Shown: in pieces, positions 1-23,949 of the stretch
Layout: every line of letters starts with the position of its first letter
Position numbering within the stretch: the stretch's first letter is position 1
Origin: Macrostomum lignano
Lineage: Eukaryota
Length of the DNA stretch: 64,000 nucleotides
Assembly (NCBI GenBank): GCA_002269645.1
Contig: NIVC01001710.1
Coordinates: 135,071 to 199,070 of the forward strand
Reading direction: 5' to 3'
The notes under the pieces: model-generated
Told to the model about the DNA's origin: nothing
Database searches by the model: none
The model's input: the letters and a program-made list of their open reading frames with translations, nothing else
Made by a program: the position numbers and the translations under genes

Positions 1-807
1 TGAGAAAGCTCAGTTATTTTGCTATTAAATAAGCATTCACTAGTCACATAAATAACAATACATATATATATAATCTAATACATTCGATTAAATCCTGTAT
101 ATATTTAAAAGTACATTTATGCAATCACTGCTTAAAATGGGTCGCTTATTCGCCAAGTGCCATAAGCATGCAGAGGTGCAATGCTCAGAAACTTGATTGA
201 GTTAATTTAACATTCATTCCTTCACCCCGGACATAAAGTGCCACCAGCCAACAGCGGTGCAATTGTTGGGGAAATTGCATTCAAAACATTTAGCTAGAAA
301 TGTATGTTCAACTTCTTAAAAACAAGCCAAACAATTGGCGGTTTAAAAAAACAAACAAGCAACATTGCAGAAAGACGATAACTATACAGAATCCAACAAC
401 TGCTACTAATAGTATTATTAGTAATCAAATAAAATTAACAATAACAAGCTGAAGAGAATTGCAAATCAGAAATTTCATGTTATCTTCGTGTATCAGTTAT
501 GTGTGAGTGTCTAAATAACAGCGATAATGACAGTCAAGACAAGAGACAGAAAAGTCAGTAAGAGAAAAAAAGCAGAAATTCTGGGCAGTAGCAGCAGCAG
601 CAGCAGCATACCAAAGAGATTCTTTGCTGAGCTAAAATTGCATGTGTCAACTGTTAAAAAATATAATAAAAATGCGCCAAATTTAAACAAAAAGTAAAAG
701 ATATTGTTTGCACATTATATGAAAAAACCTGCACTGTTCTTCTACTTAAAGTAGCAACAACGACATTTTAAATGTTTTAAAATATAATTTATTAATTTGA
801 ATGTTGC

Positions 808-5656
<4,849 letters not shown>

Positions 5657-7073
5657 TTATGCTAGAACATAATCTGAGTGCTGATGTGTGATATATAGAA
5701 TCACATTGATGCAGATTATAAACTACAATGCATTGCAAAAACTTCAATTCAATAGATATTAGAATGTGGACAAAATGGGGCAAACTAAATAAAAGGTAAA
5801 ATTAGTTCTTCGACATTTTAGAATCAGAGTTTGATAAAGCATAGTATATTAAATAATCATTTATAAATAGACTTCAAGAAAATGTTCCTTTTCACATCCA
5901 GCCTTCTGTATTTTTTTAGATTTTCAAAGGTTATATTAAATCATTGAAATCATTCATTGAATGGTTGCTTAAGACAAAAAAAATCAGTTTAATACTTTAC
6001 TATGCAAAGTCTAATTACAGGATTATATTGATCAGGTTAAGTATATTAAATATTTCTTGTTTAAATAAAGAAAGAAACTATAATCTATAATAAAAGATGA
6101 TAGATTCCAATACTTTTGTGAATTTTTGTGAATTAAAATTGACACATAATTTGGGGAGGCAATCTTTGAATCCTAGGATTTGGCCTTTTTAGTCTGGGAT
6201 ATATGGGTATTAACCTCAGGGATCTCTAAATGAATATTATATGGTTTGTACAAAAGTTCTAGATTCTAAGATTTTAGTAAAAGAAAAGTTTGGGATTTCA
6301 ATTGAAGTCCCTAAGAGAAATATGCTATTTTAGTACTTATGCCTAAAGTCAAAATTGCAATAATAGCAAATAAAACTAATATTGTTTTATAATTAACTTG
6401 ATACATATAGGATTCAATACTTGGTTTTGAGTGCTTAAATGTCTAGGTCACGAGTGCACAGACAGATATTTAAACAAGAGAAACCAAGTATTGAGTAGTA
6501 TTATAACACAATATATATTTCTCGTGCATTAAATGACTCTAGCCAATATGCAATCACAAGCCATATAAAGCACACTTTTAGTGTTTAACTAGCATCTTAC
6601 AACCCCTTTGGAGGACTTTAACCAGCAGTGAAAAAACTCATTCTTGTCTGCAAGTTACTTACCATTACAATTAAGACATAGCTTTAAGATATTAATTCTT
6701 ACAGACCTTATCTTCTTTATAGAAAAAGCTTTTAAAAACCTCAAAATTCTCATAAATGATATTGTTGCATGATTTTTTTATAAGATAAATCCCCTCCAAT
6801 TGACTTTGTACCAGTTAAAAAGATTGCTACCCTCTCCCATAAGCATATGAACTTAAGGCAGAAGCATTGGCCATAAACAATAGGATTTGCATCTGCACAC
6901 CAAATTTTTATTTGTAGCTGTTATTTATTATATTATATTATAAAATAAATGCAAAACACATATGTACACAATGGTCTCAGCTTTAGTATATTTATAGATT
7001 ATAGAAGATTATATTATATATTATATCAGCAACACAAATAAAGCTCAGAAAATTCAGGACAATCGAAATCTGC

Positions 7074-7905
7074 CAGTCTTGGGCAAGTTACTCAAAAAAG
7101 TAACTTGCATTACTGTAACTTAAGTTACCAATTTTTTAAAAGTAACTTACGTTAGCCTAGTAACTTTAGACAAAAACCTGGTAACTTTTAAGTTACTGGC
7201 CATTACTCACTTCCGTTACCCATGTTATTAACTAAATTTTCTGCTTTTTTCACATTGCACATTTTTTCACATTGTTGTTACCGAAATTTGCCATTGGGAT
7301 TAATGGATTAACAGCCAGAGACAGGAATTGGCGTCACAATGTGAGGCAAGTAGAAGGACCAATGGGCAATGGCAATCAATAATTAAAATTATAAATGATA
7401 AAATAAACAAATATCAATAATTCAATAGAGTAAAATAAATAGAACTGTATAAAATGGTGTAGTGTACTGCAGTGCCAGTGGAGGGACTTGTGGAGGCTAC
7501 AGATGAATTTCTTTCTTTGGTTGTTTGTTTGAATCAAATTTGAAAATTTTTAGTAACGAAAATGAAAGGCGAAAATATTTTACCGAAATTAACAAGGTAA
7601 AACATGTTTCAAGTATTTCTTCATTAATTAAGCGCAATACCATATGATACTATTCACTTAATTTTGAATTTAGGAATGAAAAATGCAAAAACATGTGACA
7701 ACCGGCGTACTAGCTAAGCATTTGAGTTTTAAATTTAAATATTGTGATTGTTGCTAAGTAACTGTAATGGACTTCTGAAATTTCAATAACTTACTGTTAC
7801 TCCGTTACTAAAATAAAAAAGTAACTTCCGTAAGGAACACTTTTACGAAAAAGTAACTTGCGTTACCATTTGCAAGTTACTCGATAATGGAAGTGCCCAA
7901 CACTG
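7074..7905. mobile_element. Non-autonomous hAT-type DNA transposon (MITE), 832 bp
   Basis: TIRs CAGTCTTGGGCA / TGCCCAACACTG. Flanks AAATCTGC (7066-7073) and AAATCAGC (7906-7913) form an 8-bp TSD with one mismatch. Many subterminal AGTAAC/GTTACT motifs. Confidence 0.8.
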
Positions 7906-10544
7906 AAATCAGCCATGGGCTATGGGCTATATAGCCCATAATATATATGTCCAAATTACTACTCTATACTTTTTATCTGCCAATGTTCAGGAAATGAGTT
8001 GGTTCACTATACCAACTGTGCTCTTTTGCTTTCTGCGCAAAGCAGCAATTTGTTTGCGACTACTGTTTTTTCTCTTTACCTATTTCTGTCTGGGCACATT
8101 CGGAAACTTATTGCTTAGCCCTCATATAGTCAGATGTAGGTCTATCTTTAAGTGAAGTATATAATGACTCAAAGAATGTACACCAATATATACATAGGAT
8201 ATATGTATATATTCAAGTGTACAAGTGTACATATACAAGTTAGTTTGCCAGACATATACAGCACAGTATGTAGAGAGTGTAGCTTACAGGGTATAAGCTA
8301 GAGTGCAGTTTAGTACTGCAGTCTGCAATGCTATATAAGTGAATAAATGAATGATAAATTGGCAATCTTCTAGTTTGTTTGGTGATATTATTTTTGAGTT
8401 TGAAATGGTATGTCAATATAATGAAACAGCAGAAAACAATACCTACAGCTAAAAGGGATACAAAATAGAATCTGATAAGTAACAGTAATAGTTAAGGGGC
8501 AGAAAATAGAGTTACAGATAATAATGCGCTACCCAATATAGCATAGTGCCAAATGCTGCACCAGGGTATAGGCAATGCAACAGAAACTCTTCAAGATGCA
8601 GTTCAAACAGGGCATCAGATGTACTATGCATATTGTTAGTTTCTGGGTTGTTAGGTTCAACAGTTCTACCATAGGCCATATCTTGTTTGGTGGCACAATA
8701 AACTTGGTACTGCTGGTTGACCAGCCATGTTAAAGAAATTTGTGTGAATATGAGAGTGAGAGTCTAAGTGAAGTCAATGAAATTAGAATGTCTTTAATAA
8801 TGCTATTTTGCATCCTTTTTGGCCATAGACTGTTACTGTCACTGTTACTTGTCAGATTCTATTTTGCACCCCTTTTGGCCATAGTCCATAGACATCATTT
8901 TCTAGCATGTCATTACGTTGTAGCACCAATTCAAACTTGAAAATAATATTGCAAAAGAAACTGGAAGATCGCCGATAAATCAATTGGTAAAGACAAGAGA
9001 GTGAGAGCAAGAGAAAGGGAAAAGAAATGAGATACTTCCATTTTTTTAATAAGCATGCTACCCCTCCCTAGTCCTTCAGTGTGGTGGTGCATAGGTAAGT
9101 TGTAAATCTGGACAAAAGTAAGTCATACTAGATGGGTAAAATTTTGAGGTTGGGCATGTATGAGTAGCATTTTAGGTCAAAAAGTAAGTCACATAGTCAG
9201 TGTAAATCAGGGGAATTGTGTATGCATATGTGCCAGTATCTATATTTCAGGTTACACAATAGGTATGCAAAAAATTAGGACTTATATACTTATGTTATAA
9301 TATTAATAGTATTCAAATTAGGCCCTAGAAAAAAACATCAAAATTAGGCCTAACCAAATTTATATGAACAATTTAGACAAAAATAATTATTAAAAAGCTA
9401 AATATAATCTAATATTATATATATATGCTTATATATCATGTAATCATTATTGTGACTAAAAAAATCTAATGGCCAAACTAATTAGTGGGTATAATAGTCA
9501 CTATAGATGAAATACTTTGGGACAAAACATCTATGGTCAGAAAGGATTTAGGATAAAACAACTAGGCCTTAGAATTCATATTTTTTAATATAGATAAAGA
9601 CAGACAGACAGACAGAGTTTTGATTTTTATAGGTAGAGATTAACATTTATATCTAGTATAGATTAGATTCCCCCCCCCTCAAAAATGTTCTGGATCTGAG
9701 CCAGGCCTAAAATACTAGCAGAGATTGTTCATAATTCATAAAGGGCCTAGGCTTAGGCCTATTGGCCTAACCTAAGCATTGAAAAAAATACTGCAGATCT
9801 TAATTATCCATACGAGTTATAGGCCTAGACTAGGCTACACGCTAGTCTTAGATCCTACCGCCTAACCGAGGTAGCGAGCGATGGTGTGAGACTGAGAAAT
9901 TTTAGTCAATTGCCATTGATCGTGAGCGACGAGCGTCTACCTACTAACGTCTTATTGAGGACGACGACGCGCGGGTTAAGATTATGATTATGGTTTAGAG
10001 TAAAAATGGAAGTTCAGAATGAATGATAAACAACCAATTTTTTTAAGTTAGCAATAACACACATTACAATTTTAATTTTTTTGAAAGTTAAATAATATTG
10101 TTTTATTTGTTATATTAATAATAAAAACTATTTTAAATCTGCTAACTATAACTTCATTCAGCCTCGGGAATGACCCCCCAAATTTAAGTCCAGCCTTAAG
10201 CTTATTTTCTGTGGCTTAATAATGCATTTAGACTATGCTATAAAAAATTACAAAATTAGAGGAGACTGCGATCGATCATTAATTTGTGTAGCTACCAAAA
10301 TAAATTGCTCATATTACAAGAATTTTTACGGATTGCCAGGATCGGATATGTAATGTAATGAAAAAACTGTCTTACATGTATCGTCGGGTCGCCTGCCAGG
10401 TTTACATGTAGCTGAATGGGTCATGGAGGCGACGTCTCCCCGCTAATCTGAACCGAGGAGATTTATACGGGCCGCGTAGTAGCCTGCAACTACGCGGTCC
10501 TGTCAACGGTCAGAGTAGAGTAGTCGATCTTCTGGCAACTAGTA

Positions 10545-11160
10545 GCTTGTCAACGGGAGAAAAACCGAAATGATGCACATCGGCACCAGCACCGCGCCCG
10601 AGCTGAGCCTGCCGAGCGGCGAAGCGATCTCAACCTGCCAATGCAAGACTTCCGCTACCTGGGCGCGCTGATCTTGAATCCTGAAGATATCATCATGGAC
10701 CGGAAAGCACAAGCCTGGCGTGCTGCAGTCAAGATCAGCCCTATCTTCAGCTCCGCAGCGCCCGACGCCCTCAAGATCAAGTTGTTCCGCGCCACAGTCG
10801 AACCGATCCTGCTCTACGGACTGGAAGCCGTACCGGTGACTACCACCCGGGAAAACGCGCTAAAAGGCATCTACCGGGCGCTTCTCCGCTACAAACTCGA
10901 CATCCGATTCCCCGAGACCATCTCGAACCGCGATCTCGACCGGCGCACCGGCCCTCCACCTCTCAGCGTTATCCTGCGGCGGCGAAAAACCCTCGCCGGC
11001 CACGTTTCACCCACCGCGAGAACGGCTTCGACGCGGCCAAGGCCGTGCTGCCACGCTGATCCAGACTCTGACTGACGACCTCAGCGACCTTGACCTGACC
11101 CCGAGTGACACTGCTGATCTCTGCCCCTCTGAGCTGTTTCGCGAACGCGTGCGCGGATTC
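10545..11160 (+). mobile_element. 5'-truncated, frameshifted non-LTR retrotransposon (RTE/L2-like) fragment, C-terminal part of the RT ORF
   Basis: Reads ...EKTEMMHIG...[frameshift]DFRYLG...KAQAWRA...KIKLFRATVEPILLYGLEA...ISNRDL...LSVILRRRK, the usual thumb and post-RT region of LINE ORF2. Confidence 0.75.
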
Positions 11161-11754
11161 TGTAACCCAAATTCTATTCCTCTATTCTATAGTAGCCTGC
11201 AGCAAAGTCAACCATCTGTATACTTGGTATACATGTAAGTGTCTTGAACTAAATTTGTGACCGAGATGACAATTATAGGGCTTCCGTGCTACTTTCACCG
11301 ATCTGAGGCACGTACTATTTTCATAGATTCTGTATGTTTGAAAAGCTATATTTCCTACATGTATTTCATTTACTCGGAACTCGATTACTCGCCGACCAGG
11401 ACTCGTACAGTATCGTCGTTTAAAATCATTCAAAATTAATATGTATTTTTTGATATCCTCTATATCAATTCTGATACTGTACCTATGTAAAAGGCAATTG
11501 CAGAATGCTTCATATACGATAGCTTGAGGAAATATCACATTGAAAAGTTTTAAAATGTTACTTGAGAGAGTACATAATTAATGTATAAAAACGTGTAAAA
11601 GTTCTTCGCCAAGTCGAACAGCTCTTTGAGCCTTTATAGTTTACGAAGGCGTCCACGAGTAAATGTACGTTCAAGGACCACTATGACGATACGTACGTTA
11701 CGAGTAAACTCCTAGTAAAAGTTGCGTTAGGGTCTTTTATAAATTTCAATTTTA

Positions 11755-12472
11755 TCAACTGAACACAACATCTTTGTCCATCTTTTGTCGCCTGTTGCTA
11801 GCCTCGCTACGATTCTGCAGATTCGCGATCAGCTGACCAGTCTGGCTACCGACCTTGTTGCCATAGTTACCAGCCTCCGTGCTGGGCACCGTGACTGCAC
11901 ACCTGTCAGAGGTGTCCAGTAGACTTCGTTCAGTTCCCCCTTCGGAGCCATGCTTAGCTGCCGTCTTTGGTTGGCCCTGAAATTGAGGCAAACTTCTAAA
12001 ACTGTACCAGATACAAGCATGTACATGCGCCGAAATACATATGCCATGTACGCGCTGTAGAGCTAACACTTACGCGTTGATCGTAGTTGGCTAGAAATCC
12101 CCACTGCTCATCTCTACAAAAAGGAATGCATGAATTTTCATCATTGATTAATTTATGCATGCTAGTACATATGGCGTGCGCACAGCTAGCAGGCCCCAAA
12201 GCCCCCAAAGGGTAACCAAGCTCGACAAATGACAGGAGCTCAACTTTTGGGCCTCTTGGGCGCGGCATCTACCGGCCGAAGGCAAGGGTAGGGAGGCACT
12301 CACCAAGAGTCATAGGCGCCCACCATGATACCAAATGTTCGCGTCCCTAAAGCATGCTAAACTAAAGTATGCTAAAATTTTCGAATCGAACTCGCCTCTG
12401 CCGATCAAGACGCGCCTCGCGTATCAAATTTTGGCGCCAAATTTCGTCGCGCAATGCCGGATCAATCGCCAT
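11755..12472 (-). CDS. C2orf50/CIMIP5-like ciliary microtubule inner protein, 112 aa; exons 12472-12396, 12113-12074, 11976-11755
   Basis: Spliced product MAIDPALRDEIWRQNLIREARLDRQRDEQWGFLANYDQRGQPK...AVTVPSTEAGNYGNKVGSQTGQLIANLQ...RRQKMDKDVVFS. It matches the remembered C2orf50/C20orf85 pattern D(E/Q)xW...NW(S/G)FL..YD..G..K...TVPS...G. Phases sum to 339 nt; the first donor is AG|GCGAGT. Confidence 0.75.
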
Positions 12473-12478
12473 GGAAAC
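12465..12478. promoter_or_regulatory. X-box (RFX-binding) motif ATCGCCATGGAAAC overlapping the start codon of the CIMIP5-like gene
   Basis: Exact match to the nematode X-box consensus RTHNYYWTRRNRAC, at the 5' end of a predicted ciliary gene. Confidence 0.45.
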
Positions 12479-13189
12479 TGCGACGCGAGATGACCAACTC
12501 GCAACTTGAGTCTTTATAAGATTGAGTCTAGACAATGCTCCGCGGTAGTTACTGCAGTGGGAGGGCAACATGCAACTGCTTACTAGTTTTACAGTGAAGT
12601 CTGGTCGAACTAGAGGAGTGCAGCAACCAAACAGCTTTCTCTTAGCTACCGACTCCGCATCCAGTCGCATTGAAGCCACAACTGCTGTACAGGTACCCCA
12701 TCGGGGGGGGGGGGAGGATCAGGCGAATCCCAACAACAGCTCTTAAAGCTATAACGCTTCTTCCCCTCTGCCCAAAAGCAGATGTATTTAGCAGCGGAGA
12801 AGTCGCGCAGACAGCCTATTGTTCTCAAACGGAATGGATCGATATAGTCGCCTGCTCTCATCTCTAACCGCTGTCTGTCTGCATCTCTCTTACCCTCTCG
12901 TCTATCTCTCATCCCCCGAAAATGGTTTTTTTCCTATGCGACACTTAATTAAATTGGAAATGGCATTTTTCATTTGGAATTTTTTTCATTACCCCGCGGT
13001 TGGTGCGGGACTAGCTTGTAGACTGATGGAGTAAGGAGTGGGTGCAGTACCGCTGTATGGGGCCAACTATGCAATTGGGAATTATATTGCCTAATCATGG
13101 GGATTTTAGTAATTATTTTATTATATGTTTAGCCAAAAAACATCTTCATTAGACTTCCATACGGAACCTTCTCATGGATAACTATAATC

Positions 13190-13748
13190 GACTTGGCAAC
13201 CTTCCAGTCTACAATCATCCAATCGGCAACCTTCCAGTCTACAATCATCCAATCGGCAACCTTCCAGTCTACAATCCTCAACTCGGCAACCTTCCAGTCT
13301 ATAGTCATCCAATCGGCAACCTTCCAGTCTCCAGTCCTCCACTCGGCAACCTTCCAGTCTATAGTCATCCAATCGGCAACCTTACAATCTACAATCATCC
13401 AATCGGCAACCTTCCAGTTTACAATCATCCAATCGGCAACCTTCCAGTCTACAATCATCCACTCAGCAACCTTCCAATCTACAATCATCCAATCGGCAAC
13501 CTTCCAGTCTACAATTATCCACTCGGCAACCTTCCACTCTACAATCATCCACTCGGCAACCTTCCAGTCTACAGTCATCAACTCGGCAACCTTCCAGTCT
13601 ACAATCATCCACTCGGCAACCTTCCACTCTACAATCATCCACTCGGCAACCTTCCAGTCTACAGTCATCAACTCGGCAACCTTCCAGTCTACAATCATCC
13701 AATTGGCAACCTTCCTGTCTACAGTCATCAACTCGGCAACCTTCCAGT
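13190..13748. repeat. 30-bp minisatellite (GGCAACCTTCCAGTCTACAATCATCCAATC) between the divergent CIMIP5-like and CLCA genes
   Basis: About 19 tandem units; the length is a multiple of 3, which explains the repetitive ORFs 13129-13870. Confidence 0.95.
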
Positions 13749-14228
13749 AGACGAAAATATTCATCCAGAAACCAATCCACTTTCCAGCATGTACCAGGGT
13801 ACCGTCCCCATCCAAAAGATAAAAAAGAGCTCAGCCCCTGCCTGAGCAATATTCGACATAGTATAAGCATTCCGTCAGTTCAAGGCAGGATGGAATCTAA
13901 AAAATAAAAAAGTTGAGCTCACGCGGACAATAATTTCTAGATAAGCAATGATGTACACTCCTACCAGCATTGGTTTAGCAATATTCTCTATCTAGGAATG
14001 TTAAATTGCCTGCAGGAAAAATTGAAAGTCTCAGAGCCAACTACTGCTGACTTTGTACGCTTTTTGTTTTAAAAATAAAATTCTTATCAATTAAAAAGTG
14101 TTGTTGCTCAAGCTTGCAACACACTTGAGAACATTTATTATCTTTAGTAGCTGCAGATATTTGAGACCATTGGTCTGTCTGAAAATATCATGCTGCACCT
14201 GTCAGTTTGAAGTCTTCTGCTATTTCTG

Positions 14229-17200
14229 ATGAAGCTCATGAATTGTGAATTGATTTGGATTATTCTATCAGCGCTGCTGTGCTGCGGTCAGCTGGGATCA
14301 TCCGGCATTGAATTGGGATCGGACGGCCGATTCAGCGGTATTCGAGTGTCCATCGATTCTGGCGTACCTGTCAACAGGACTGCGTTAGGGAAGCTGAAGG
14401 TGAGTGAGGAATGCGATTATATGAAAATGACCGATTTAGATAATTAGGTAAATAGTATACGAAGATTAATTAGTCTGTCTAAGTTTTGTTACCGAGGTGA
14501 GGTGGGTACGTGAGATGGGCTATGTGAGGTTAGGCTAGGTTGGGTAGTGTATGTGTGATGGACTAATGGTGGTGGTGGGGTGTCCCGAAGTTGGGTGGTC
14601 TGAAGGTGCGGTGAGCTGAAGGTGCTGTGAGCTGAAGGTGCGGTGAGCTGAAGTTGGATGGTCTGAAGGTGCGGTGAGCTGAAGGTGCGGTGAGCTGAAG
14701 GTGCGGTGAGCTGAAGGTGCTGTGAGCTGAAGGTGCTGTGAGCTGAAGGTGCGGTGAGCTGAAGGTGCTGTGAGATGAAGGTGCGGTGAGCTGAAGGTGC
14801 GGTGAGCTGAAGGTGCTGTGAGATGAAGGTGCGGTGAGCTGAAGGTGCGGTGAGCTGAAGGTGCGGTGAGATGAAGGTGCGGTGGTCTGAAGGTGCGGTG
14901 AGCTGAAGGTGCTGTGAGCTGAAGGTGCGGTGAGCTGAAGGTGCTGTGAGCTGAAGGTGCGGTGAGCTGAAGGTGCGGTGAGCTGAAGGTGCGGTGAGCT
15001 GAAGGTGCGGTGAGCTGAAGTTGGATGGTCTGAAGGTGCGGTGAGCTGAAGGTGCGGTGAGCTGAAGGTGCGGTGAGCTGAAGGTGCTGTGAGCTGAAGG
15101 TGCGGTGAGCTGAAGGTGCGGTGAGCTGAAGGTGCAGTGAGCTGAAGGTGCGGTGAGCTGAAGGTGCAGTGAGCTGAAGGTGCGGTGAGCTGAAGGTGCG
15201 GTGAGCTGAAGGTGCGGTGAGCTGAAGGTGCGGTGAGCTGAAGTTGCTGTGAGCTGAAGGTGCGGTAAGCTGAAGTTGGATGGTCTGAAGGTGCAGTGAG
15301 CTGAAGGTGCGGTAAGCTGAAGTTGGATGGTCTGAAGGTGCTGTGAGCTGAAGGTGCAGTGAGCTGAAGGTGCGGTGAGCTGAAGGTGCGGTGAGCTGAA
15401 GGTGCGGTGAGCTGAAGGTGCTGTGAGCTGAAGGTGCGGTGAGCTGAAGGTGCGGTGAGCTGAAGGTGCAGTGAGCTGAAGGTGCGGTGAGCTGAAGGTG
15501 CAGTGAGCTGAAGGTGCGGTGAGCTGAAGGTGCGGTGAGCTGAAGGTGCGGTGAGCTGAAGGTGCGGTGAGCTGAAGTTGCTGTGAGCTGAAGGTGCGGT
15601 AAGCTGAAGTTGGATGGTCTGAAGGTGCTGTGAGCTGAAGGTGCAGTGAGCTGAAGGTGCAGTGAGCTGAAGGTGCAGTGAGCTGAAGGTGCAGTGAGCT
15701 GAAGGTGCGACGGGCTGTGCACTGAATAACAGAATCCCAATAAAAATTGTTCCAGGCAGCATTTCAGCTGGCTTCGGAACTCTTGGCCGTGGCCACGAAG
15801 CCCGTAATGAACGGCAGGAAGTCTTACGCGTTCGGCTCGGTGAAATTTCTGCTTCCGGACAGCTGGAGCAGCGCCGGATTGCCGAGTCGCTTTGGAACCA
15901 GTGGCAGGCAGGACGAGTTGGCGCACTTCCGGGTGCACAACGCACAGGATGGGAGCCAGGAGCCGTGGACGCCTCAGCCGTTGGGCTGCGGGAGGCCCGG
16001 CCTGTTCACCCTGCTGCCCTGGCCGGCTGTGACTGCGCTGGACAAGGAGACTCGTGAGTGGCGAGACTTGCTCTCGATCTCGTACACCTCAATCGAATCT
16101 CAGGACTCAGTCTCATCTTTGAGCTGTCAATCTCACCTTAGGACTCGATCTCACGTTAGGACTCGATCTCTCACTTTAAGAACTCAATCTCACCTTAGGA
16201 CTCGATCTCACCTTAGGACTCAATCTCACCTTAGGACTCGATCTCACCTTAGGACTCAATCTCACCTTAGGACTCGATCTCTCACCTTAAGGACTCCATC
16301 TCACCTTAGGACCCAGTCTTACCTTAGGACTCCAAGTCTCATCTTTGAGCTCTCAATCTCACCTTAGGACTCCATCGCACCGTAGGACTCAATCTCACCT
16401 TCGGACTCGATCTCCCCTCAGGACTCAATCTCACCTTAGGACTCGATCTCCCCTCAGGACTCAATCTCACCTTAGGACTCGATCTCACCTTAGGACTCAA
16501 TCTCACCTTAGGACTCGATCTCACCTTAGGACTCAATCTCACCTTAGGACTCGATCTCTCACCTTAAGGACTCCATCTCACCTTAGGACCCAGTCTTACC
16601 TTAGGACTCCAAGTCTCATCTTTGAGCTCTCAATCTCACCTTAGGACTCCATCGCACCGTAGGACTCAATCTCACCTTCGGACTCGATCTCCCCTCAGGA
16701 CTCAATCTCACCTTAGGACTCGATCTCACCTTGGGACTCAATTTCTGAGTGTCTGCCACAGCGAGCTACAGGGAAGCGGGTTTTCTTTTGTTTCAGTCAG
16801 CCGCGTCATCCTGCGCGAGTTCAGCCGGCTCCGCTGGGGCGCATTCGCCGAGTTCAACGGGCACGCCGGGCCGCACGGCTACGTGAGCGGCAACCGGCTT
16901 CACCCGGTGCGCTGCTCGGCCGCCCTGAGCGGCATATTCGCTCACAACGAGACCTACGGCAGGTGCAAAATCGACCGGGAGACGCTGACTTTGGAGCCTA
17001 ACTGTAGATTCTTTCTATACCCCGATCAGCCCACAGCCGAGGCGTCGCTTATGTACACCGTCTACATTGGCGCGGTGCGGCACTTCTGCGCCAGCGTCAG
17101 CCAAAGCGGCCTGGCGCACAACCCGGACGCGCCGAACCCGCACTACCGGCACTGCCCGGCCGGAGCCAGCGTGCGAGACGTGCTAGCGGGCCACGAAGAC

Positions 17201-20200
17201 TTCCGGTTCGGGCCGGAGATAACTGACCCCGACACGAAGATCAACTTTACGGAGGTGACGCCGATAATCGATCGTCGACTTGTCGTAGTCATGGACGTGT
17301 CGCGGAGCATGCGGGTAAAATTGCTGGGAAAAGGCCTTTTTAAGCACGCTCGTACTTATACATGAGGGTTGCAGGTTGCAGGCACCCTGGCCTAGCGCAA
17401 CTCCTTCGACGACACTGTCCCATTAAAATGTTGAGGCAATTCTGCCCATTCCGCTGGCTCCTGAGCACACACAAGCGCGCCAATGCTGTATGCGGCACAG
17501 CACTCATGCACACGCTAACACACTCTTTGTGCCTTGTGGGTTGGTCCTCATGGGTGTGAATCGGCCAATTTTAGACAATTGCTTTTGGCCATAACGTATT
17601 GCCATTTGAAAGTGGCAAAGGCTCTTCTATTCATCCAAATGCTACGGGCTGCACAATATTGCATAGAATTGTTCAGTCATTCTATCTTTAATGCGTACTT
17701 GCCGTACTTAGAAGTGAAATCGCTTACTAATTAGTAGAAATCAAGGATTTGAATTGAATACCTTGTCGTTCATGCAGAACTCGCGGCTCTTAAAACAAAG
17801 AAGAGCAGCTGAACCAGAAGAACCAGCAAAAGTGCCCAATCTACTAAAATGCGACTCACCAAAGATCTCCCAAGGTCTATCCAGCTGAGGATGAATGCTA
17901 CTGAATGGATCCTGGGAACCAGTACATCAAAATCAGACCCTCATATCGGTTACTTTCACTTCAGGGCCAACCGTTGGACAAGATGAAGCAGTCGATGCAG
18001 AACCTGTTGAGCCAGCAGCTGGCAGACGATGTGCAATGCGCCCTGATCTCATACTCCACGTCTGTGCACATCCTGGCACCGCTCAGGCAGCTCAACAGCT
18101 CGGAGGCTCGGCAAGCTCATTGGGGGCTGGTGAGGAGTCTGACTGCAAGCGGCGTCACCGCCACAGGCGATGCGATGGCAGCTGCCCTGGAGGTAAAAAC
18201 ATTACAATAGCATTGACGACGGGCCTGCAGCTCTTGCTGAGATTTACTCGTATGATCATGCGTGACTCGATTTTTCGATTTAATGCTAGACGAATTTCAT
18301 TTTTTATTTAAGTCCAGATTTTAAGGCGTATTTACGATCCGTACTCCGAAATGCACGAAATTTAAATCGATTTTATAAAGGCAGTTTCATCAACAACAAC
18401 AACAACACAAGATACTGTCAAAATGTTTCAAGTGAAAAAAGATAGAACGGTCACAAAATATGTGCCGCTGCGCTGTCGACTGAATGCAGCCAGCAAGCAG
18501 TCGACGAAATGCCGAGTGTGCACCTGTCCTCGCCGGTAGGGTGCCTGCAGCGTCAGCAACAGCATCCCCTGCACCGGCTGCTGGCAGTACAACTCTGCGA
18601 CCTGCTAGCTGGAGTCGCCGACGGTGCTTGGACGGACTAGACCGGCGGTACTTCACACTCGCAGCCAACCAAGTCTTATTGGCCTTCAAAACTTTCTCTC
18701 TAAGCCTCTTAGGATTCCTACTTAATTATATTGAAGCTGTGATCTCCCCTTCATCTCCCACCGCAGCTGCTCGGCTGCAACCTGACTCAGCCGTCCCGTT
18801 CCAACACCGGCCAAGTCCTGCTGATCACCGATGGCGAGGAGAACCACCAGCTGCGCTACAGCCTGAGCGACATCGTCCGGATCGCTGCTCAGACGTCCGT
18901 GACTGTGGACACTGTGGCCTTCGGCCGGCTGGCCGACACTCGTCTAGCCCGACTGTCCGCAACTACTGGAGGCACAGCGCACTTCTCCAGATTCATGGGC
19001 CCCGTTAACGATATGGTGGAGAGTCTCGGACAGGTGGCCGGCCGAATGGCCGACAGTCCGGATGCCTGGGTCAACGTGAGTACTAGCCGCCAGTAGCAGA
19101 GATAGCCAGTAGCCAGTGGCCAGTAGCCAGTAGCCAGTGGCCAGTATCCAGTAGCCAGTGGCCAGTATCCAGTAGCCAGTGGCCAGTAGCCAGTAGCCAG
19201 TGGCCAGTAGCCAGTAGCCAGTAGCCAGTGGCCAGTGGCCAGTAGCCAGTAGCCAGTAGCCAGTAGCCAGTAACCAGTAGCCAGTAGCCAGTAGCCAGTA
19301 GCCAGTAGCCAGTGGCCAGTAGCCAGTAGCCAGTAGCCAGTAGCCAGTGGCCAGTAACCAGTAGCCAGTAGCCATGCAGTGGCCAGTAACCAGTAGCCAG
19401 TAGCCATGCAGTGGCCAGTAACCAGTAGCCAGTAGCCAGTAGCCAGTAACCAGTAGCCAGTAGCCAGTGGCCAGTAGCCAGTAACCAGTAGCCAGTAGCC
19501 AGTAACCAGTAACCAGTAGCCAGTAGCCAGTCCCCAGTAGCCAGTAACCAGTAGCCAGTAGCCAGTGGCCAGTAGCAGCGATAGCCAGTGGCCAGTAGCT
19601 AGTAGCCAGTAGCCAGTAGCCAGTGGCCAGTAGCCAGTAGCCAGTAGCCAGTAGCCAGTAGCCAGTAGCCAGTGGCCAGTAGCCAGTAGCCAGTAGCCAG
19701 TAGCCAGTAGCCAGTAGCCAGTAGCCAGTAGCCAGTAGCCAGTAGCCAGTGGCCAGTCTGATTCCAGCCTTCACAATGCCCTTTCCACACAGCTGATTTC
19801 AAGCCAGCTCCGAAGCAGCCGCAACGCCACACCAGCGGCGCTCAGTTTTACAGTCGACTCTTCAGTGAGCGGCGCCGGTCTGCAGGCTTTCGTTATTGGC
19901 GCAGTCAGGCCGGCGCGGGTTCTGCTGCACCTGGCGCCAGTTGGCGACGCCCTCGACGCTGCAGTCGAGGAGGATCTGCAAGGCGATGTGCAACTGGGCA
20001 GCGGGCTGCTGCGGCTGAAAGGAAGAATTCGGGTGAGGAGCGACTCACCGTGCTGCTCAGCTCACAGGCTAGTCTAGCAATCCATTCTGTTCCTAAATCT
20101 AAAGATAGCCTTAGACTCTAGAATTACCTGTCAAACAAAAGAGACTCATGGGGGAATTTCTAAGACGTCAAGGTTCATGGAGGGAATTGCTGAGATGTCA

Positions 20201-23200
20201 AGGCTCATGAGGGAATCGATGAGATGCGAAGGCTCATGGGGAATTGCTGAGATGCCAAAGCTCATGAGGAATTGCTGAGATTTCAAGGCTCATGGGGGAA
20301 TCTATTGATTAGACTAGCAATCCATTATGCTGTTTATCAAGTAGTTTATAGAATTATGGTATTAAAAGTACAAGATAATTACTCTAAGTAGCTTAACAAG
20401 CTGTAAACGCTGTACATTATCACTGTTAATCTGGGCAGGTAACTCGAAATCGAGTGTATTAACCAGAATGATTTTGATAAGCTTTCTACTCTCTATCCAC
20501 CTATGTATGCACAACGCATTTCTGCCATAATTCAAGCCTTTAAATGCGGATAATTGCAGGAATTCCTATAGCAATGGCGTTGGAATGCAACAAAAATTAT
20601 TGCTTCTGCTAGACAGCCTGTCCCCTGTTCTTCCCAGCTTCACTTTTTATCATCATCGCAAGCATAAACTCGGACGGCCCAGGGCCGTTCCTTATCGAAT
20701 TTGCAAGAACAGCCATATTTGCTGGCAATTATAATTATTTACCGAAACTCCTGCAGTTTTCACATGAAAATCTTCTACCTGATAGCTATAGAAATTCTCG
20801 TTCAAGCGGTTGCTCGCCGTCTGCGGCCACACAAAAAGTGCATCGTGTCCTTACTAAATAGGCCTTCAGGTTCCTATAGCAACCATTTCCCATGACTTTG
20901 AAGTCCCAGCTCCTTGAAGAGTCAAGAGCATCTTTTAGCACGGGGCTCTGATCTCTGATTCTCTCTGGCGGTAAACCCATGCGGTCCCGTGAGAGTTGAC
21001 ATCAGGTCGGCTTTGGTCTTGGGTTTGGAGTCGCAATGCCCTCCTTAGTCCTCGGGTTCGATGCCTCAATAATTTTAGACTCGGAAACTGGCCCACACCG
21101 CCAAGGCACAGAGATTGTACACATGCGTGACGACGAGAAAGTGAGAGCCACTGCCCACCCTGTGTGAGCGTGTGCCTGCGTACTTTTTCAACTCAGCCTC
21201 CTTGCAAACTTTTCATGCTGACGGAGTGGAGCCCAAAAGCTTTATTTTCATGCCTAATCTCAGCTCAACCAGCTTGAACTCTTTTCCAACCGAACTCCAA
21301 CGCAGCCGGGCCGGTGGAAGCTGTACGTGTCTGTGTTGCCCACTGCCAGCCAATCGGAGGCCGCCACGTCACTCTACCATTCTGTCCTGATCTCGGGCCA
21401 GCCGGCCGCCTCTGATTGGCCGCCAGTCAGACTAACCGGCTTTCTCAGCCAATTGGAGGCGAGGCTCGACTCGAGCAGCCGGCATTCGGTGCACGCGTAC
21501 TTGCACCGCGGCTCCGCTGACGGATTCGTGCGTCCGGCCGAGCTCTGGGCCAGCGTCGAATCTGACGATGGCACCGTCGCCAACTTTCAGCTGTTCGATC
21601 ACGGAGCTGGTGAGTGAAATCTGTGCAGCCTGGAGATTTTGCAAAGATTATTGATTTTTAAACAGCTCTGAACGGGGTTTCGCCATAGACAAATAAGATT
21701 GGAGTAACTAAAAAGCCACCGCTGCCATTTTATTAAAACGGTAGCATTATTTGTACACGAAGACAATTTTCCTTTCACAGTCAATATCATCAGCCTTGCA
21801 GTCGTCTGTTAGCGCAAATCGTAAAGCCAAACTCTGTGCACCTGTTGTCAGGCGCTGACGTGTCACCCAACGATGGCATTTATTCTGCCTACCTGCCGCT
21901 GCACCGGATGTCCGGGCCGCCGCAGGACTACAGCGTCCGCCTGCGGAGCCTCAGCCCAGTTGACCGAGTCGCCTCCGCTGGCAAGTTCACCGTCACCGCG
22001 GTCGACTCAGTCGATTTGGCCCGTCTGCCGCCGGCTCGCGTCACCGACTTCGGCTGCACTGTCAATGCCACCAGCGGCCGGCTGCGGATGCGCTGGACCA
22101 CCGTTGGCGACCAGCTGGACAGTGGCGCTGGTAGGTTCTGTGTGGATTGCGCATGGCTGCTGATTGGGCATTGTGTGTCTCAGTAGTCTCAGTAGTCATT
22201 TGTCTTTTGTGTCTGCGTGCCCTTCGATTCTACCTTGAAATTCTACTCTTACTTTTACCTCTATTTGTGTTGAAAACTTTTTGCCGATGGTGTCTCCAGT
22301 GCTTGTGTTGTCGGGCTGTATTCCTTTTATGTCTTCAAGAATTTTCTTCTTGTGTCCTATTATGTGTCTTTACCATGTGTCTTCCGGTCTTCCAATTGTT
22401 TCTTTCTGTGTTCTCGAGTCTTCCAGTTGTGTCTTTAGTATGTGTCCTCCGGTCTTCCAATTTTTTCCAAGGACTACTTAAGTAGATATATACGTTACTT
22501 TAGTCGTCCTTGATTTTGTCTTTATGTATTCTCTCTTTAATTTGTCTTCTAGTCTTCCAATTGTGTCTTTAATTTGTGTCTTCCGGTCTTCCAATTGTGT
22601 CTTTAATTTGTGTCTTCCGGTCTTCCAATTGTGTCTTAAATGTGTCCTCCAGTCTTCCAATTGTGCCTTTTGTGTCCTGCAGTCTTCCAATTGTGTCTTA
22701 AATGTGTGTCCTCCAGTCTTCCAATTGTGTCTTGAATATGTGTCCTCCAGTCTTCCAATTGTGTCTTTAATTTGTGTTCTCCGGTCTTCCAATTGTGTCT
22801 TGAATATGTGTCCTCCAGTCTTCCAATTGTGTCTTGAATATGTGTCCTCCAGTCTTCCAATTGTGTCTTGAATATGTGTCCTCCAGTCTTCCAATTGTGT
22901 CTTGAATATGTGTCTGATTGTATCCGCCTGCCATCTCTCCAGCAAGCCGCTACTTGGTTCGGGCATCCGCCAACCGCAGCCTGCTGGAGCTCAACTTCGC
23001 ATCAGCAGACGACGTAGGGGCGGCCGCCCAGCTGCCCTCGGTGCCCTCCGGGCAGCCCATGACCCTGGAGGTTGCAGCTGCCGACGAGCTGCCCAGCTAC
23101 CCATCCGTCACATTCTACCTGGCAGTGCGGGCGAACAACTCAGCAGGTGTGCTCAGCCAGCTGTCCAATGTGGCTGCCGTGCAGCTGACCATGCCTGACA

Positions 23201-23949
23201 ATCTGGCTGAGATTGGCGTCGACGTTGGGGGCGAAAGCTCAACATCTAGCACAGAATCCAGCACGACATGTAGCACAGGATCCAGCACGGCATCTGCTCC
23301 AGAATCCAGCACGACATCTAGCACAGAATCCAGCACGGCATCTACTCCAGAATCCAGCACAGCATCTAGCACAGAATCCAGCACGGCATCTACTCCAGAA
23401 TCCAGCACGACATTTAGCACAGAATCCAGCACGGCATCTACTCCAGAATCCAGCACGACATCTAGCACAGAATCCAGCACAGCATCTAGCACAGAATCCA
23501 GCACGACATCTAGCTCAGAATCCAGCACAACATCTAGCACAGAATCCAGCACGACATCTCGCTCAGAATCCAGCACGACATCTAGCTCAGAATCCAGCAC
23601 GACATCTAGCACAGAATCCAGCACGACATCTCGCTCAGAATCCAGCACGACGTCTAGCTCAGAATCCAGCACGACGTCTAGCTCAGAATCCAGCACGGCA
23701 TCTCGCTCAGAATCCAGCACGACGTCTAGCTCAGAATCCAGCACGGCATCTACTCCAGAATCCAGCACGACATCAGGGCTGGATTCTAGTAAACACAGTC
23801 AGAGTTGGTGGTCATACATGGTAATTGTTTTGGCCCTAATTTTCGCACCTTCAATTGCAGCATTATTAGGGTTGTTCTTACTATTTGTTCACTCGAAACT
23901 CCCGAGCAGAAGCCTTCATCTACGCAATAAAAAAGTATATCCAATCTGA
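14229..23949 (+). CDS. clca: CLCA-family (calcium-activated chloride channel regulator-like) type I membrane protein, ~1117 aa; exons 14229-14399, 15756-16053, 16797-17314, 17965-18192, 18767-19075, 19793-20032, 21306-21609, 21852-22130, 22943-23949
   Basis: Domain order: signal peptide; CLCA N-terminal domain (PWTPQPLGCG, RLRWGAFAEF, FC...HNPDAPN...C); vWA with MIDAS (DVSRS, TATG, LLITDGEE); FTVDSSV; LFDHGAGADVSPNDGIYSAY; FnIII (LPPARVTDF...WTTVGDQLDSG); Ser/Thr stalk; C-terminal TM helix. All introns are GT-AG with consistent phase (3354 nt). Confidence 0.9.
14588..15708. repeat. 16-bp minisatellite (GTGAGCTGAAGGTGCG) in CLCA intron 1
   Basis: About 70 tandem units; explains the minus-strand ORFs 14535-15945. 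Confidence 0.95.
16120..16740. repeat. 18-bp minisatellite (AATCTCACCTTAGGACTC) with a 277-bp higher-order duplication, CLCA intron 2
   Basis: The block CCAAGTCTCATCTTTGAGCTCTCAATC recurs 277 bp apart. Confidence 0.9.
19084..19757. repeat. 7-bp tandem repeat (AGCCAGT)n in CLCA intron 5
   Basis: Long direct array; explains the LATGYW ORFs. Confidence 0.95.
20147..20300. repeat. Degenerate ~30-bp tandem repeat (GGCTCATGGGGAATTGCTGAGATGTCAA) in CLCA intron 6
   Basis: About 5 diverged units. Confidence 0.7.
21000..21180 (+). mobile_element. Degenerate tRNA-derived SINE-like copy (same family as 50600-50785)
   Basis: B-box-like GGTTCGATGCC, and shares GGCACAGAGA and CACCCTGTGTGAGCGTGTG with the 50.6-50.8 kb copy. 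Confidence 0.45.
22370..22915. repeat. ~34-bp minisatellite (GTCTTCCAATTGTGTCTTGAATATGTGTCCTCCA) in CLCA intron 8
   Basis: Direct tandem array. Confidence 0.9.
23240..23775 (+). repeat. Coding 24-bp tandem repeat giving a mucin-like (STESSTTS)n stalk in the last CLCA exon
   Basis: About 22 units of TCTAGCACAGAATCCAGCACGACA in frame, between the FnIII domain and the TM helix. Confidence 0.9.

What the first reader, a model, noticed from the sequence alone, without database searches (positions are those of the whole stretch)
11755..12472. Hidden three-exon ciliary gene (C2orf50/CIMIP5-like) not represented as a unit in the ORF track
Three short pieces scattered over unrelated ORFs splice into one 112-aa protein with D(E)IW...QWGFLANYDQRGQPK...TVPST...G, the pattern I recall for C2orf50/CIMIP5 and the related C20orf85 axonemal microtubule inner proteins. 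It includes a 40-nt exon and a non-canonical donor, so automated annotation may miss or mangle it. A flatworm homologue would be testable by RNAi on motile cilia.
Basis: partly seen in the sequence, partly recalled or inferred. Interest (0 to 1): 0.7.

Follow-up and report, generated by a model that had tools for sequence, protein, structure and literature searches.

The report
Flatworm CIMIP5-like ciliary gene, three exons
The three fragments do splice into a real small gene of the C2orf50/CIMIP5 (Pfam LLC1) cilia-protein family in a Macrostomum flatworm genome, but a near-identical copy with the same splicing is already in GenBank, so it is an ordinary new family member.

Summary
On the minus strand, 12472-12396 (77 nt), 12113-12074 (40 nt) and 11976-11755 (222 nt including the stop) join in frame through a GC-AG and a GT-AG intron. 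The product is 112 aa.

- **Family:** it passes Pfam LLC1 (PF14945; 34.1 bits, cut-off 27.3). It scores 84.8 bits against a family HMM built without it.
- **Source:** the window is Macrostomum lignano-type DNA, about 96% identical and collinear over more than 13 kb with GenBank scaffold NIVC01000452.1.
- **Existing annotation:** on that scaffold an RNA-seq-derived model (PAA82759.1, "hypothetical protein, partial") uses exactly the same junctions. The window's own copy is not in the protein collection.
- **Gene structure:** the 40-nt exon (phase 2 to 0, encoding xxxWGFLxxxDxx) followed by a last exon starting G-x-(P/K)-K is also found in a mammalian C2orf50 homolog, an annelid, an octocoral and a second M. 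lignano paralog. This ties the gene to the CIMIP5 type.
- **Paralogy:** it is the fast-evolving, N-terminally short paralog (25-37% identity to relatives), not the canonical copy.
- **Function:** a role as a ciliary microtubule inner protein is inferred from homology only. CIMIP1, solved in the B-tubule lumen, matches just the N-terminal helix, and only through a profile.

Verdict: a real gene and a new member of a known kind, of low interest.

The parts
12396..12472 (-). Coding exon 1 (77 nt). ATG at 12472-12470. Encodes MAIDPALRDEIWRQNLIREARLDRQ plus the first two bases of R26. Holds the D-x-I-W part of the N-terminal helix.
   Evidence: Identical structure in the homeolog model, L001 10067-10143. 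Aligns to the family D-x-(I/V)-W helix.
12114..12395 (-). Intron 1, 282 nt, GC-AG (GAG|GCGAGT ... TTTTGTAG|AGA). Ends exon 1 in phase 2.
   Evidence: The same GC donor and acceptor occur in L001, with a 283-nt intron. The nearby GT donor, tried with two acceptors, gives a stop codon (read). An intron at the same position and phase occurs in Capitella, Dendronephthya, Mlig028872 and the Perognathus C2orf50 homolog.
12074..12113 (-). Coding exon 2, a 40-nt microexon. Completes R26 and encodes DEQWGFLANYDQR. Holds the invariant W-G-F and D residues.
   Evidence: 100% identical in L001. A 40-nt exon of the same phase is present in the five other gene models examined whose structure resolved cleanly.
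11977..12073 (-). Intron 2, 97 nt, GT-AG (CGC|GTAAGT ... CAATTTCAG|GGC), phase 0.
   Evidence: Position and phase are conserved in all homolog gene models examined, including Lamellibrachia.
11755..11976 (-). Coding exon 3 (219 nt plus TGA stop at 11757-11755). Encodes GQPK, a lineage-specific 10-residue insertion (TAAKHGSEGG), TVPSTEAGNYG (the SNYG-like motif) and the C-terminal helix.
   Evidence: tblastn with P0002 gives E = 3e-11 on this exon alone. AlphaFold predicts a helix at residues 84-108.
12473..12538 (-). Probable 5' UTR, taken from the 5' end of the homeolog's transcript-derived model. The annotated end follows an AG dinucleotide (12539-12538), so it may be a trans-splice acceptor. 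That last point is inference.
   Evidence: The L001 gene starts at 10001, which corresponds to window 12538. The upstream frame is open, but extending the protein adds only about 1 bit to the family HMM score, and all three differences between the copies there change the amino acid. SL sequence from PMC8629364.
12465..12478 (-). X-box-like (RFX-type) element GTTTCCATGGCGAT overlapping the start codon. It has one mismatch to GTHNYYATRRNAAC. This is a weak hint only.
   Evidence: The paralog Mlig028872 has GTTGCCATGCCAAC at -201 from its ATG. No functional test was made.

Best explanation
This is a real, spliced, protein-coding gene of a Macrostomum flatworm. It has three coding exons on the minus strand and encodes a 112-aa member of the LLC1 family (PF14945) of the C2orf50/CIMIP5 type.

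By homology, the protein is most likely a small, mostly extended microtubule inner protein of motile cilia. The inferred mechanism has two parts:
- An N-terminal helix (residues about 5-35, D-x-I-W...W-G-F) lies on the inner wall of the doublet microtubule. The matching segment of CIMIP1 is seen doing this in the B-tubule lumen.
- A C-terminal SNYG-like motif (T-x-x-G-N-Y-G) with its following helix (residues about 84-108) contacts a tubulin dimer.

The gene is a fast-evolving, N-terminally shortened duplicate of a more canonical M. lignano paralog (Mlig028872).

Shown here: the gene structure, the family membership, the conserved intron positions and the paralogy. Inferred: transcription of this particular copy, ciliary localisation and tubulin binding.
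For: - In-frame three-exon CDS with consensus-like splice sites.
- Pfam LLC1 34.1 bits against a cut-off of 27.3, E = 4.9e-8. Independent family HMM 84.8 bits.
- An exhaustive HMMER scan of 1.84 billion representatives returned 16 hits. The full-length matches I looked up are an M. lignano paralog, Capitella, Ciona 'C2orf50-like', Bugula, Dendronephthya and Lamellibrachia.
- BLASTP against a mammalian 'C2orf50 homolog' gives E = 6e-10.
- All family-invariant residues are kept: W30, G31, F32, D37, G40, P70, T72, Y77, G78.
- The 40-nt phase 2-to-0 exon and the following phase-0 intron are conserved in the Perognathus C2orf50 homolog (218/40/192), Dendronephthya (242/40/183), Capitella (44/180/40/189) and Mlig028872 (47/162/40/189).
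- The homeolog PAA82759.1 has identical junctions. The GenBank annotation that holds it was made from an RNA-seq-guided transcriptome assembly (PMC5730564).
- Both copies keep an intact ORF and intact splice sites. The four amino-acid differences avoid the invariant positions.
- A profile search of the PDB hits bovine C20orf85 homolog in 8OTZ (E = 2.4e-7), CIMIP1 in 9V10, and weakly the sea-urchin protein in 8SNB (E = 0.45), over the D-x-I-W...W-G-F helix.
- In sea-urchin sperm doublets, CIMIP1 residues 11-68 are built in the B-tubule at protofilaments B07-B08 (PMC11834534).
- C2ORF50 carries a SNYG module and localises along motile cilia of human bronchial cells, with the antibody checked by knock-out (PMC10973386).
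- The AlphaFold model shows helices at 5-35 and 84-108 around a disordered middle, as expected for an extended inner protein.
Against: - No expression, junction-read or localisation data exist for this copy. The window's exact protein is not in the 15-billion-protein collection.
- No selection signal was found between the two copies. pN/pS is 0.36 with p = 0.11, and exons differ as much as introns (9/339 against 5/379).
- The protein is the most divergent member seen, at 25-37% identity. It lacks the N-terminal 40-90 residues of its relatives, has a 10-residue insertion, and ends VFS instead of the common V-C-Y.
- The strict SNYG pattern [ST]-N-x-x-[ILVY]-G is not met.
- As a single sequence it does not hit CIMIP1 in the PDB.
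- CIMIP5 itself matched no solved chain by sequence.
- Foldseek found nothing. Model confidence is modest: pLDDT 65.5, pTM 0.28.
Confidence: 0.82

Rival explanations
1. The gene is a relaxed or decaying duplicate. It is a real LLC1-family locus, but this fast-evolving copy has lost the ancestral ciliary role. It would then be either on the way to becoming a pseudogene or recruited to another microtubule structure, while Mlig028872 does the canonical job.
For: - It sits on a long branch and has the lowest identities in the family.
- It has lost the N-terminal region and the C-terminal V-C-Y, and gained a 10-residue insertion.
- Exons are no more conserved than introns between the homeologs, and pN/pS is not significantly below 1.
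Against: - Both copies keep the ORF, the start codon, the stop codon and all four splice sites.
- Every family-invariant residue is retained, and the four replacements avoid them.
- The homeolog model derives from transcripts.
- Only nine differences exist, so the selection test has almost no power.
Confidence: 0.13
2. The gene model is incomplete at its 5' end. The protein would start further upstream, for example at the in-frame ATG at 12571-12569, giving 145 aa, which is close to the family's usual 146-151 aa. Alternatively there is an undetected N-terminal exon.
For: - The frame upstream of the ATG at 12472 is open for 70 codons in both copies.
- GenBank flags the homeolog CDS as 5'-partial.
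- Relatives carry 40-90 more N-terminal residues.
Against: - The 33 extra residues add only about 1 bit to the family HMM score.
- All three differences between the copies in that stretch change the amino acid, as expected for non-coding DNA.
- The transcript-derived model starts at 12538, downstream of that ATG.
- tblastn finds no N-terminal family motifs elsewhere in the window.
- Ciona and Clavelina isoforms of 124 aa also lack most of the N-terminus.
Confidence: 0.08
3. The match is a chance concatenation of unrelated ORF fragments, and there is no gene.
For: None beyond the fact that the pieces were chosen by eye from short ORFs.
Against: - Pfam score above the curated cut-off and 84.8 bits against an independent HMM.
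- Junctions identical to a transcript-derived GenBank model.
- Intron positions and phases conserved from cnidarian to mammal.
Confidence: 0.01

Closest known systems
C2orf50 / CIMIP5 (ciliary microtubule inner protein 5), Pfam LLC1 PF14945
   Same: - Full-length similarity: the D-x-I-W helix, W-G-F, D-x-x-G-x-P-K, (V/L)-P-x-T, the Y-G motif and the C-terminal helix.
- Pairwise E = 6e-10 against a mammalian C2orf50 homolog. Hits to tunicate 'C2orf50-like' and 'CIMIP5-like' proteins.
- The same exon-intron structure, including the 40-nt microexon.
   Different: - Only 25-37% identical to relatives.
- Shorter: 112 aa against about 146-151 aa in typical relatives (121-192 overall), with no N-terminal R-T-T-S-A-G-Y-R region.
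- A 10-residue insertion after G-Q-P-K.
- C-terminus VFS instead of the V-C-Y common in invertebrates.
- The first intron uses a GC donor.
- It is a second, lineage-specific paralog rather than the canonical flatworm copy.
M. lignano BOX15_Mlig021624g1 (PAA82759.1) on NIVC01000452.1
   Same: - 96% identical protein with identical exon boundaries and the same GC donor.
- Collinear neighbourhood, with a CLCA/VWA gene head-to-head.
- It is the homeolog or duplicated-chromosome copy of the window's gene.
   Different: - Four amino-acid and nine CDS nucleotide differences.
- It carries a 4.3-kb insertion flanked by long terminal repeats about 200 nt downstream of the stop. The window lacks this insertion.
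- Its deposited CDS is 5'-partial, with 22 extra in-frame residues.
M. lignano BOX15_Mlig028872g1/g2 (PAA72521.1, PAA53651.1), the canonical paralog
   Same: - It is the nearest non-self relative: 39% identity over the matched stretch, 37% over aligned columns, E = 4e-14.
- Same family and the same 40-nt exon.
   Different: - 146 aa with the usual N-terminus and the C-terminal I-V-C-Y.
- 42-48% identical to other spiralian members, against 28-34% for the window protein.
- All of its donors are GT.
C20orf85 / CIMIP1 (LLC1), solved in doublet microtubules (8OTZ, 9FQR, 9V10, 8SNB)
   Same: - It shares the N-terminal D-x-I-W...N-W-G-F helix. A profile search gives E = 2.4e-7.
- In sea urchin, residues 11-68 are built in the B-tubule at protofilaments B07-B08 (PMC11834534).
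- This is the only structural anchor available for the mechanism.
   Different: - Similarity is detectable only through a profile and only for about 40 residues. The single sequence gives no hit.
- After W-G-F, CIMIP1 lacks the D-x-x-G-x-P-K motif, and the C-terminal half is not alignable.

Membership tests
Pfam LLC1 (PF14945), the family of C20orf85/CIMIP1 and C2orf50/CIMIP5 | Whole-protein score above Pfam's gathering threshold | tested here: met
   34.1 bits against a cut-off of 27.3, E = 4.9e-8, covering protein residues 8-87 and profile positions 12-94 of 119. Controls scanned the same way: Perognathus C2orf50 homolog 60.1 bits, Mlig028872 58.4 bits, Ciona 48.9 bits.
C2orf50 / CIMIP5 subfamily | Full-length alignment to named C2orf50/CIMIP5 proteins, including the D-x-x-G-x-(P/K)-K motif after W-G-F and the (V/L)-P-x-T...Y-G segment, which did not align in CIMIP1 | tested here: met
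   - BLASTP E = 6e-10 against the Perognathus 'C2orf50 homolog', query residues 8-92.
- Invariant W30, F32, D37, G40, T72, Y77 and G78 in A1; G31, F32, D37, G40 and G78 in A2.
- The family HMM covers model positions 54-150 of 152.
- CIMIP1 chains align only up to W-G-F.
C2orf50 / CIMIP5 subfamily | Conserved gene structure: a 40-nt exon entered in phase 2 and left in phase 0, followed by a last exon starting G-x-(P/K)-K | tested here: met
   Exon lengths by gene:
- Window: 77/40/222.
- Perognathus C2orf50 homolog: 218/40/192.
- Dendronephthya: 242/40/183.
- Capitella: 44/180/40/189.
- Mlig028872: 47/162/40/189.
. The CIMIP1 gene structure was not examined, so this feature supports membership of the family but was not shown to exclude CIMIP1.
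C2orf50 / CIMIP5 subfamily | One-to-one orthology to CIMIP5 of other animals | tested here: not met
   A neighbour-joining tree and the identity matrix place the window gene with Mlig028872, on a long branch. Mlig028872 is the copy closer to other species' proteins. The window gene is therefore a lineage-specific co-orthologue (in-paralog). The tree rests on about 110 columns and is weak.
SNYG-module microtubule inner proteins (Andersen et al. 2024, PMC10973386) | SNYG motif [ST]-N-x-x-[ILVY]-G followed by an associated alpha-helix | tested here: inconclusive
   The strict pattern is absent from the window protein and from most invertebrate members. It is present in the Perognathus (SNQVVG) and Dendronephthya (SNGHYG) proteins. 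The window has T72-E-A-G-N-Y77-G78, with Y-G in the aligned columns and a predicted helix at 84-108.
Ciliary microtubule inner proteins (functional class) | Located in the lumen of axonemal doublet microtubules; expressed in cells with motile cilia | not testable with these tools
   The evidence is by homology only. CIMIP1 is solved in the B-tubule and human C2ORF50 stains motile cilia. No expression data were found for Mlig021624 or Mlig028872 in the supplements searched.
RFX-regulated ciliary genes | X-box promoter motif near the transcription start | tested here: inconclusive
   One match with one mismatch overlaps the ATG (12465-12478). The paralog has a one-mismatch palindrome at -201. 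Capitella, Dendronephthya and Lamellibrachia have none within -1000 to +200. Such motifs are frequent in this window: 20 found against 8.4 expected.

The most novel reading that the evidence does not exclude
Macrostomum keeps two CIMIP5-type genes. The window's copy is short, fast-evolving, carries an insertion and has lost the V-C-Y end. On this reading it has specialised. It could serve one class of cilia (for example protonephridial or sensory rather than epidermal). It could also serve a non-axonemal microtubule array, which is conceivable because, from my own recollection and not checked here, macrostomid sperm lack axonemes. That would be a case of a doublet-lumen protein being re-used.
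Probability: 0.12. Interest if true: 0.45.

Novelty: new member of a known kind. Interest (0 to 1): 0.18.

Why it matters
The stakes are modest.

- CIMIP5/C2orf50 matched no solved structure here, and its only functional evidence I found is antibody staining of human cilia.
- M. lignano offers RNAi, transgenesis and ciliary gliding, so it could give a first loss-of-function test for this family. Because of the homeologs and the canonical paralog Mlig028872, that test would have to target all copies.
- The 40-nt microexon conserved from an octocoral to a mammal is a handy diagnostic for repairing gene models of this family. One annotated model examined (Lamellibrachia) lacks the upstream coding part, and two unnamed predictions look truncated at the same acceptor.

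Tried and rejected
- **Single-sequence PDB search.** It gave no relevant hit, only a spurious E = 0.25 match to a glycoprotein chain. A profile was needed.
- **Foldseek of the AlphaFold model against the PDB.** No matches. This is expected for two isolated helices at pTM 0.28.
- **Word-index homolog search.** It found only the homeolog and few others even with a profile. The exhaustive HMMER scan was what revealed the family.
- **Selection test between the two copies.** Underpowered and non-significant.
- **Longer protein or a missing N-terminal exon.** I found no support in the HMM score or by tblastn.
- **Alternative GT donor four bases downstream of the GC donor.** With acceptors at 12113 or 12111 it runs into a stop codon (TGA or TAG), so it was rejected (read).
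- **Expression data.** 'Mlig021624', 'Mlig028872' and 'C2orf50' are absent from the searchable text and held supplements of the M. lignano papers. No paper links C20orf85 to planarians.
- **X-box as evidence of ciliary regulation.** Too weak and too frequent in this window to count.
- **Bacterial promoter and terminator scan.** Irrelevant for this eukaryotic locus, and at background level.

Full report
**1. The observation**

Reading the minus strand of 11500-12800 and the mechanical ORF list shows the three pieces in three separate short ORFs: 12362-12679, 11996-12268 and 11755-12069. Joining 12472-12396 (77 nt), 12113-12074 (40 nt) and 11976-11755 (222 nt with the stop) gives a 339-nt open frame. 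It encodes MAIDPALRDEIWRQNLIREARLDRQRDEQWGFLANYDQRGQPKTAAKHGSEGGTERSLLDTSDRCAVTVPSTEAGNYGNKVGSQTGQLIANLQNRSEASNRRQKMDKDVVFS.

The splice sites are as follows:
- Donor 1 is GAG|GCGAGT. It is a GC donor that fits the donor consensus at +1 and +3 to +6, which in my experience is typical of GC donors.
- Acceptor 1 is CCTTTTTGTAG|AGA.
- Donor 2 is CGC|GTAAGT.
- Acceptor 2 is CTCAATTTCAG|GGC.

The GT four bases downstream of the GC donor cannot be used. Joined to an acceptor at 12113 or 12111, it runs straight into a stop codon (read).

**2. What the window is**

The only close database protein is PAA82759.1, 'hypothetical protein BOX15_Mlig021624g1, partial' of Macrostomum lignano. It is 96% identical over all 112 residues.

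Its scaffold is NIVC01000452.1, fetched as L001. L001 positions 1-16949 are collinear with window 23774-9968 at about 92-97% identity outside the tandem-repeat tracts, apart from one 4.3-kb insertion in L001. A CLCA/VWA gene lies head-to-head with the LLC1 gene in both.

The window is therefore Macrostomum DNA (Platyhelminthes, Macrostomorpha). It is most simply a homeologous or duplicated-chromosome copy. The Mlig_3_7 assembly is reported to contain 180 Mb of duplicated blocks at least 95% identical (PMC5730564). The window's exact protein is not in the 15-billion-protein collection.

**3. Is it a gene?**

Solving the exon chain that reproduces PAA82759.1 on L001 gives exons of 143 (66 + 77), 40 and 219 nt. 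The donor (GAG|GCGAGT) and both acceptors are the same as in the window.

According to PMC5730564, the GenBank annotation of that assembly was derived from a genome-guided transcriptome built from RNA-seq and a de novo transcriptome, using StringTie and TACO plus boundary evidence. The junctions, including the GC-AG intron, are thus transcript-derived for the homeolog. That is indirect but real support.

The deposited CDS is flagged 5'-partial and carries 22 residues translated from upstream of the ATG. I see no evidence that this extension is coding:
- Extending the window protein to the next in-frame ATG (12571-12569, giving 145 aa) adds only about 1 bit to a family HMM.
- All three differences between the two copies in that stretch change the amino acid.

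The annotated 5' end corresponds to window 12538. It sits right after an AG dinucleotide, and the M. lignano spliced leader ends in ...GCATG (PMC8629364). A trans-splice acceptor there is plausible, but that is my inference.

**4. Family**

- Pfam places the protein in LLC1 (PF14945) above the curated threshold: 34.1 against 27.3 bits, E = 4.9e-8.
- An exhaustive HMMER scan of 1.84 billion representatives returned 16 hits at E <= 0.001. Among those I looked up were:
  - a second M. lignano gene, Mlig028872 (146 aa, 39% identity, E = 4e-14);
  - Capitella teleta;
  - Ciona intestinalis 'C2orf50-like';
  - Bugula;
  - Dendronephthya;
  - Lamellibrachia.
- Searching with the Ciona protein reached tunicate 'ciliary microtubule inner protein 5-like' proteins and a mammalian 'C2orf50 homolog'.
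- The window protein aligns to that mammalian homolog directly with E = 6e-10.
- An HMM built from 17 relatives, excluding both Mlig021624 copies, scores the window protein at 84.8 bits over model positions 54-150 of 152.
- Every invariant or near-invariant column is kept: W30, G31, F32, D37, G40, P70, T72, Y77, G78.

**5. Gene structure as an independent test**

I solved the exon chains of five homolog gene models on their own contigs. The 40-nt exon is entered in phase 2 and left in phase 0. It encodes (W)-x-x-x-W-G-F-x-x-x-x-D-x-x and is followed by a last exon beginning G-x-(P/K)-K.

| Gene | Coding exon lengths (nt) |
|---|---|
| Window | 77/40/222 |
| Perognathus C2orf50 homolog | 218/40/192 |
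| Dendronephthya (octocoral) | 242/40/183 |
| Capitella (annelid) | 44/180/40/189 |
| M. lignano paralog Mlig028872 | 47/162/40/189 |

The window's 77/40/222 layout is this same structure with a shorter first coding exon. It also shows the locus is an old, vertically inherited member of the CIMIP5 type and not a retrocopy.

In the Lamellibrachia model, the coding part upstream of the W-G-F exon is replaced by a 94-nt exon that extends that exon on its 5' side, so the D-x-I-W segment is missing. Two unnamed predictions (P0012, P0013) begin with ...ILFIFR and ...LLLFFR directly before N-W-G/S-F. These read like a translated polypyrimidine tract.

**6. Position within the family**

In an identity matrix and a neighbour-joining tree over the columns the window protein occupies, the two Mlig021624 copies group with Mlig028872 but sit on a long branch.
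- Mlig028872 is 42-48% identical to other spiralian members.
- The window protein is only 28-34% identical to them.

It also differs from its relatives in these ways:
- It lacks the 40-90 N-terminal residues.
- It has a 10-residue insertion (TAAKHGSEGG) after G-Q-P-K.
- It ends VFS, where most invertebrate members end V-C-Y.

I read it as a fast-evolving lineage-specific duplicate, so not the one-to-one orthologue. The tree rests on about 110 columns and is weak.

Between the window and L001 there are nine CDS differences: four synonymous and five non-synonymous nucleotide changes, giving four replacements (R21L, C65L, Q103K, V109F). pN/pS is 0.36 with p = 0.11. Exons (9/339) are no better conserved than introns (5/379). 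The comparison is too shallow to show constraint or to exclude it.

**7. How it most likely works (inferred)**

A profile of the family hits three kinds of solved chains:
- bovine 'C20orf85 homolog' (8OTZ, 9FQR), E = 2.4e-7;
- 'Ciliary microtubule inner protein 1' (9V10), E = 1.5e-5;
- weakly, the sea-urchin C20orf85 protein (8SNB), E = 0.45.

All three matches fall over the D-x-I-W...N-W-G-F helix. A review table lists sea-urchin CIMIP1 as a B-tubule inner protein with 48-nm repeat at protofilaments B07-B08, with residues 11-68 built (PMC11834534). That is the segment homologous to the window's exon 1 and exon 2.

Andersen et al. (PMC10973386) group C20ORF85 and C2ORF50 among proteins with a 'SNYG module'. 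This is a motif that sits at the alpha/beta-tubulin interface, with a following helix on the next beta-tubulin. They also show C2ORF50 antibody signal along human bronchial motile cilia, with the antibody checked by knock-out.

The AlphaFold model of the window protein has two helices, 5-35 (block-mean pLDDT about 70-88) and 84-108 (about 65-79). They flank a disordered middle that holds the insertion and the T-E-A-G-N-Y-G motif.

My best account is a small extended protein lying on the inner wall of ciliary doublet microtubules. It would be anchored by the N-terminal helix and by the SNYG-like motif with its helix.

Several caveats apply:
- The strict SNYG pattern is not met here or in most invertebrate members.
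- CIMIP5 itself matched no solved chain by sequence.
- The single sequence does not reach CIMIP1.
- Foldseek found nothing.
- No expression data could be found.

**8. Regulation**

An X-box-like element with one mismatch overlaps the start codon (12465-12478). The paralog has a near-palindromic one at -201. Such motifs are over-represented across the whole window (20 against 8.4 expected) and are absent from three other species' promoters. I give this no weight.

**9. Verdict**

It is an ordinary result: a small gene of a known, Pfam-defined family. Its near-identical homeolog is already deposited as an unnamed hypothetical protein with the same splicing.

The points of some interest are:
- the microexon conserved from cnidarian to mammal, which is useful for repairing gene models;
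- the existence of a canonical and a divergent paralog in Macrostomum;
- the fact that CIMIP5 is still poorly characterised, so a tractable flatworm could give a first loss-of-function test, provided all copies are targeted.

Noticed in passing
L001 10993-15339 (M. lignano NIVC01000452.1); empty site in window at about 11518-11522: The homeolog carries a 4.3-kb insertion about 200 nt downstream of the gene's stop. Its terminal direct repeats (10993-11217 and 15091-15339) share 100%-identical blocks and have TG...CA ends. It contains ORFs of 848 and 367 aa. It looks like a young LTR retrotransposon that the window lacks.
   Followed up: partly
window 25453-30831 (-): A single uninterrupted 1792-aa ORF carries Pao/BEL retrotransposon domains: Peptidase_A17, RVT_1, Integrase_H2C2, DUF1759 and DUF5641. 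It is probably a recently active LTR element.
   Followed up: partly
window about 14800 to beyond 23774 (+): A CLCA/VWA-domain gene lies head-to-head with the LLC1 gene, judged by collinearity with the 1109-aa gene on L001. The stretch it spans is packed with minisatellites, for example units of 16 nt at 14600-15709, 18 nt at 16127-16742, 7 nt at 19089-19757 and 24 nt at 23242-23774.
   Followed up: partly
window 35537-36430 (+) and 51056-52087 (+): Two long ORFs match the amiloride-sensitive sodium channel family (ASC, DEG/ENaC). One covers the N-terminal part of the profile (E = 1.3e-27) and the other the C-terminal part (E = 1.1e-8). They could belong to one gene with a large intron or to two genes.
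   Followed up: no
window 11857-11870, 20870-20883, 52372-52385, 52514-52527, 60152-60165, 60248-60261: X-box-like (RFX) palindromes are over-represented in the window: 20 matches at up to one mismatch against 8.4 expected, and only 1 of 100 shuffles reached 20. The perfect match at 11857-11870 is simply the coding sequence for G-N-Y-G-N in exon 3. The pairs near 52.4 kb and 60.2 kb are unexplained.
   Followed up: no
window 12529-12521 (-), in the probable 5' UTR: AGACTCAAT, followed by a TTAT, is shared with the 35-nt M. lignano spliced leader (...GAAGACTCAATTTATTGCATG). By a rough estimate of my own, a 9-mer match in so short a stretch has a chance of about 1 in 100. It was noticed post hoc and its meaning is unknown.
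   Followed up: no
window 47190-47633: A perfect (TGAC) microsatellite of 111 copies, 444 bp at 100% match. This is unusually pure for its length.
   Followed up: no
L003 (Dendronephthya gigantea) intron 2; L005 (Lamellibrachia); proteins P0012 and P0013: The octocoral homolog also uses a GC donor (AAG|GCAAGC), but at the second intron rather than the first. The Lamellibrachia model lacks the D-x-I-W segment and extends the W-G-F exon upstream to 94 nt. Two unnamed predictions begin with residues that look like a translated acceptor tract. These gene models appear mis-built at the conserved microexon.
   Followed up: partly
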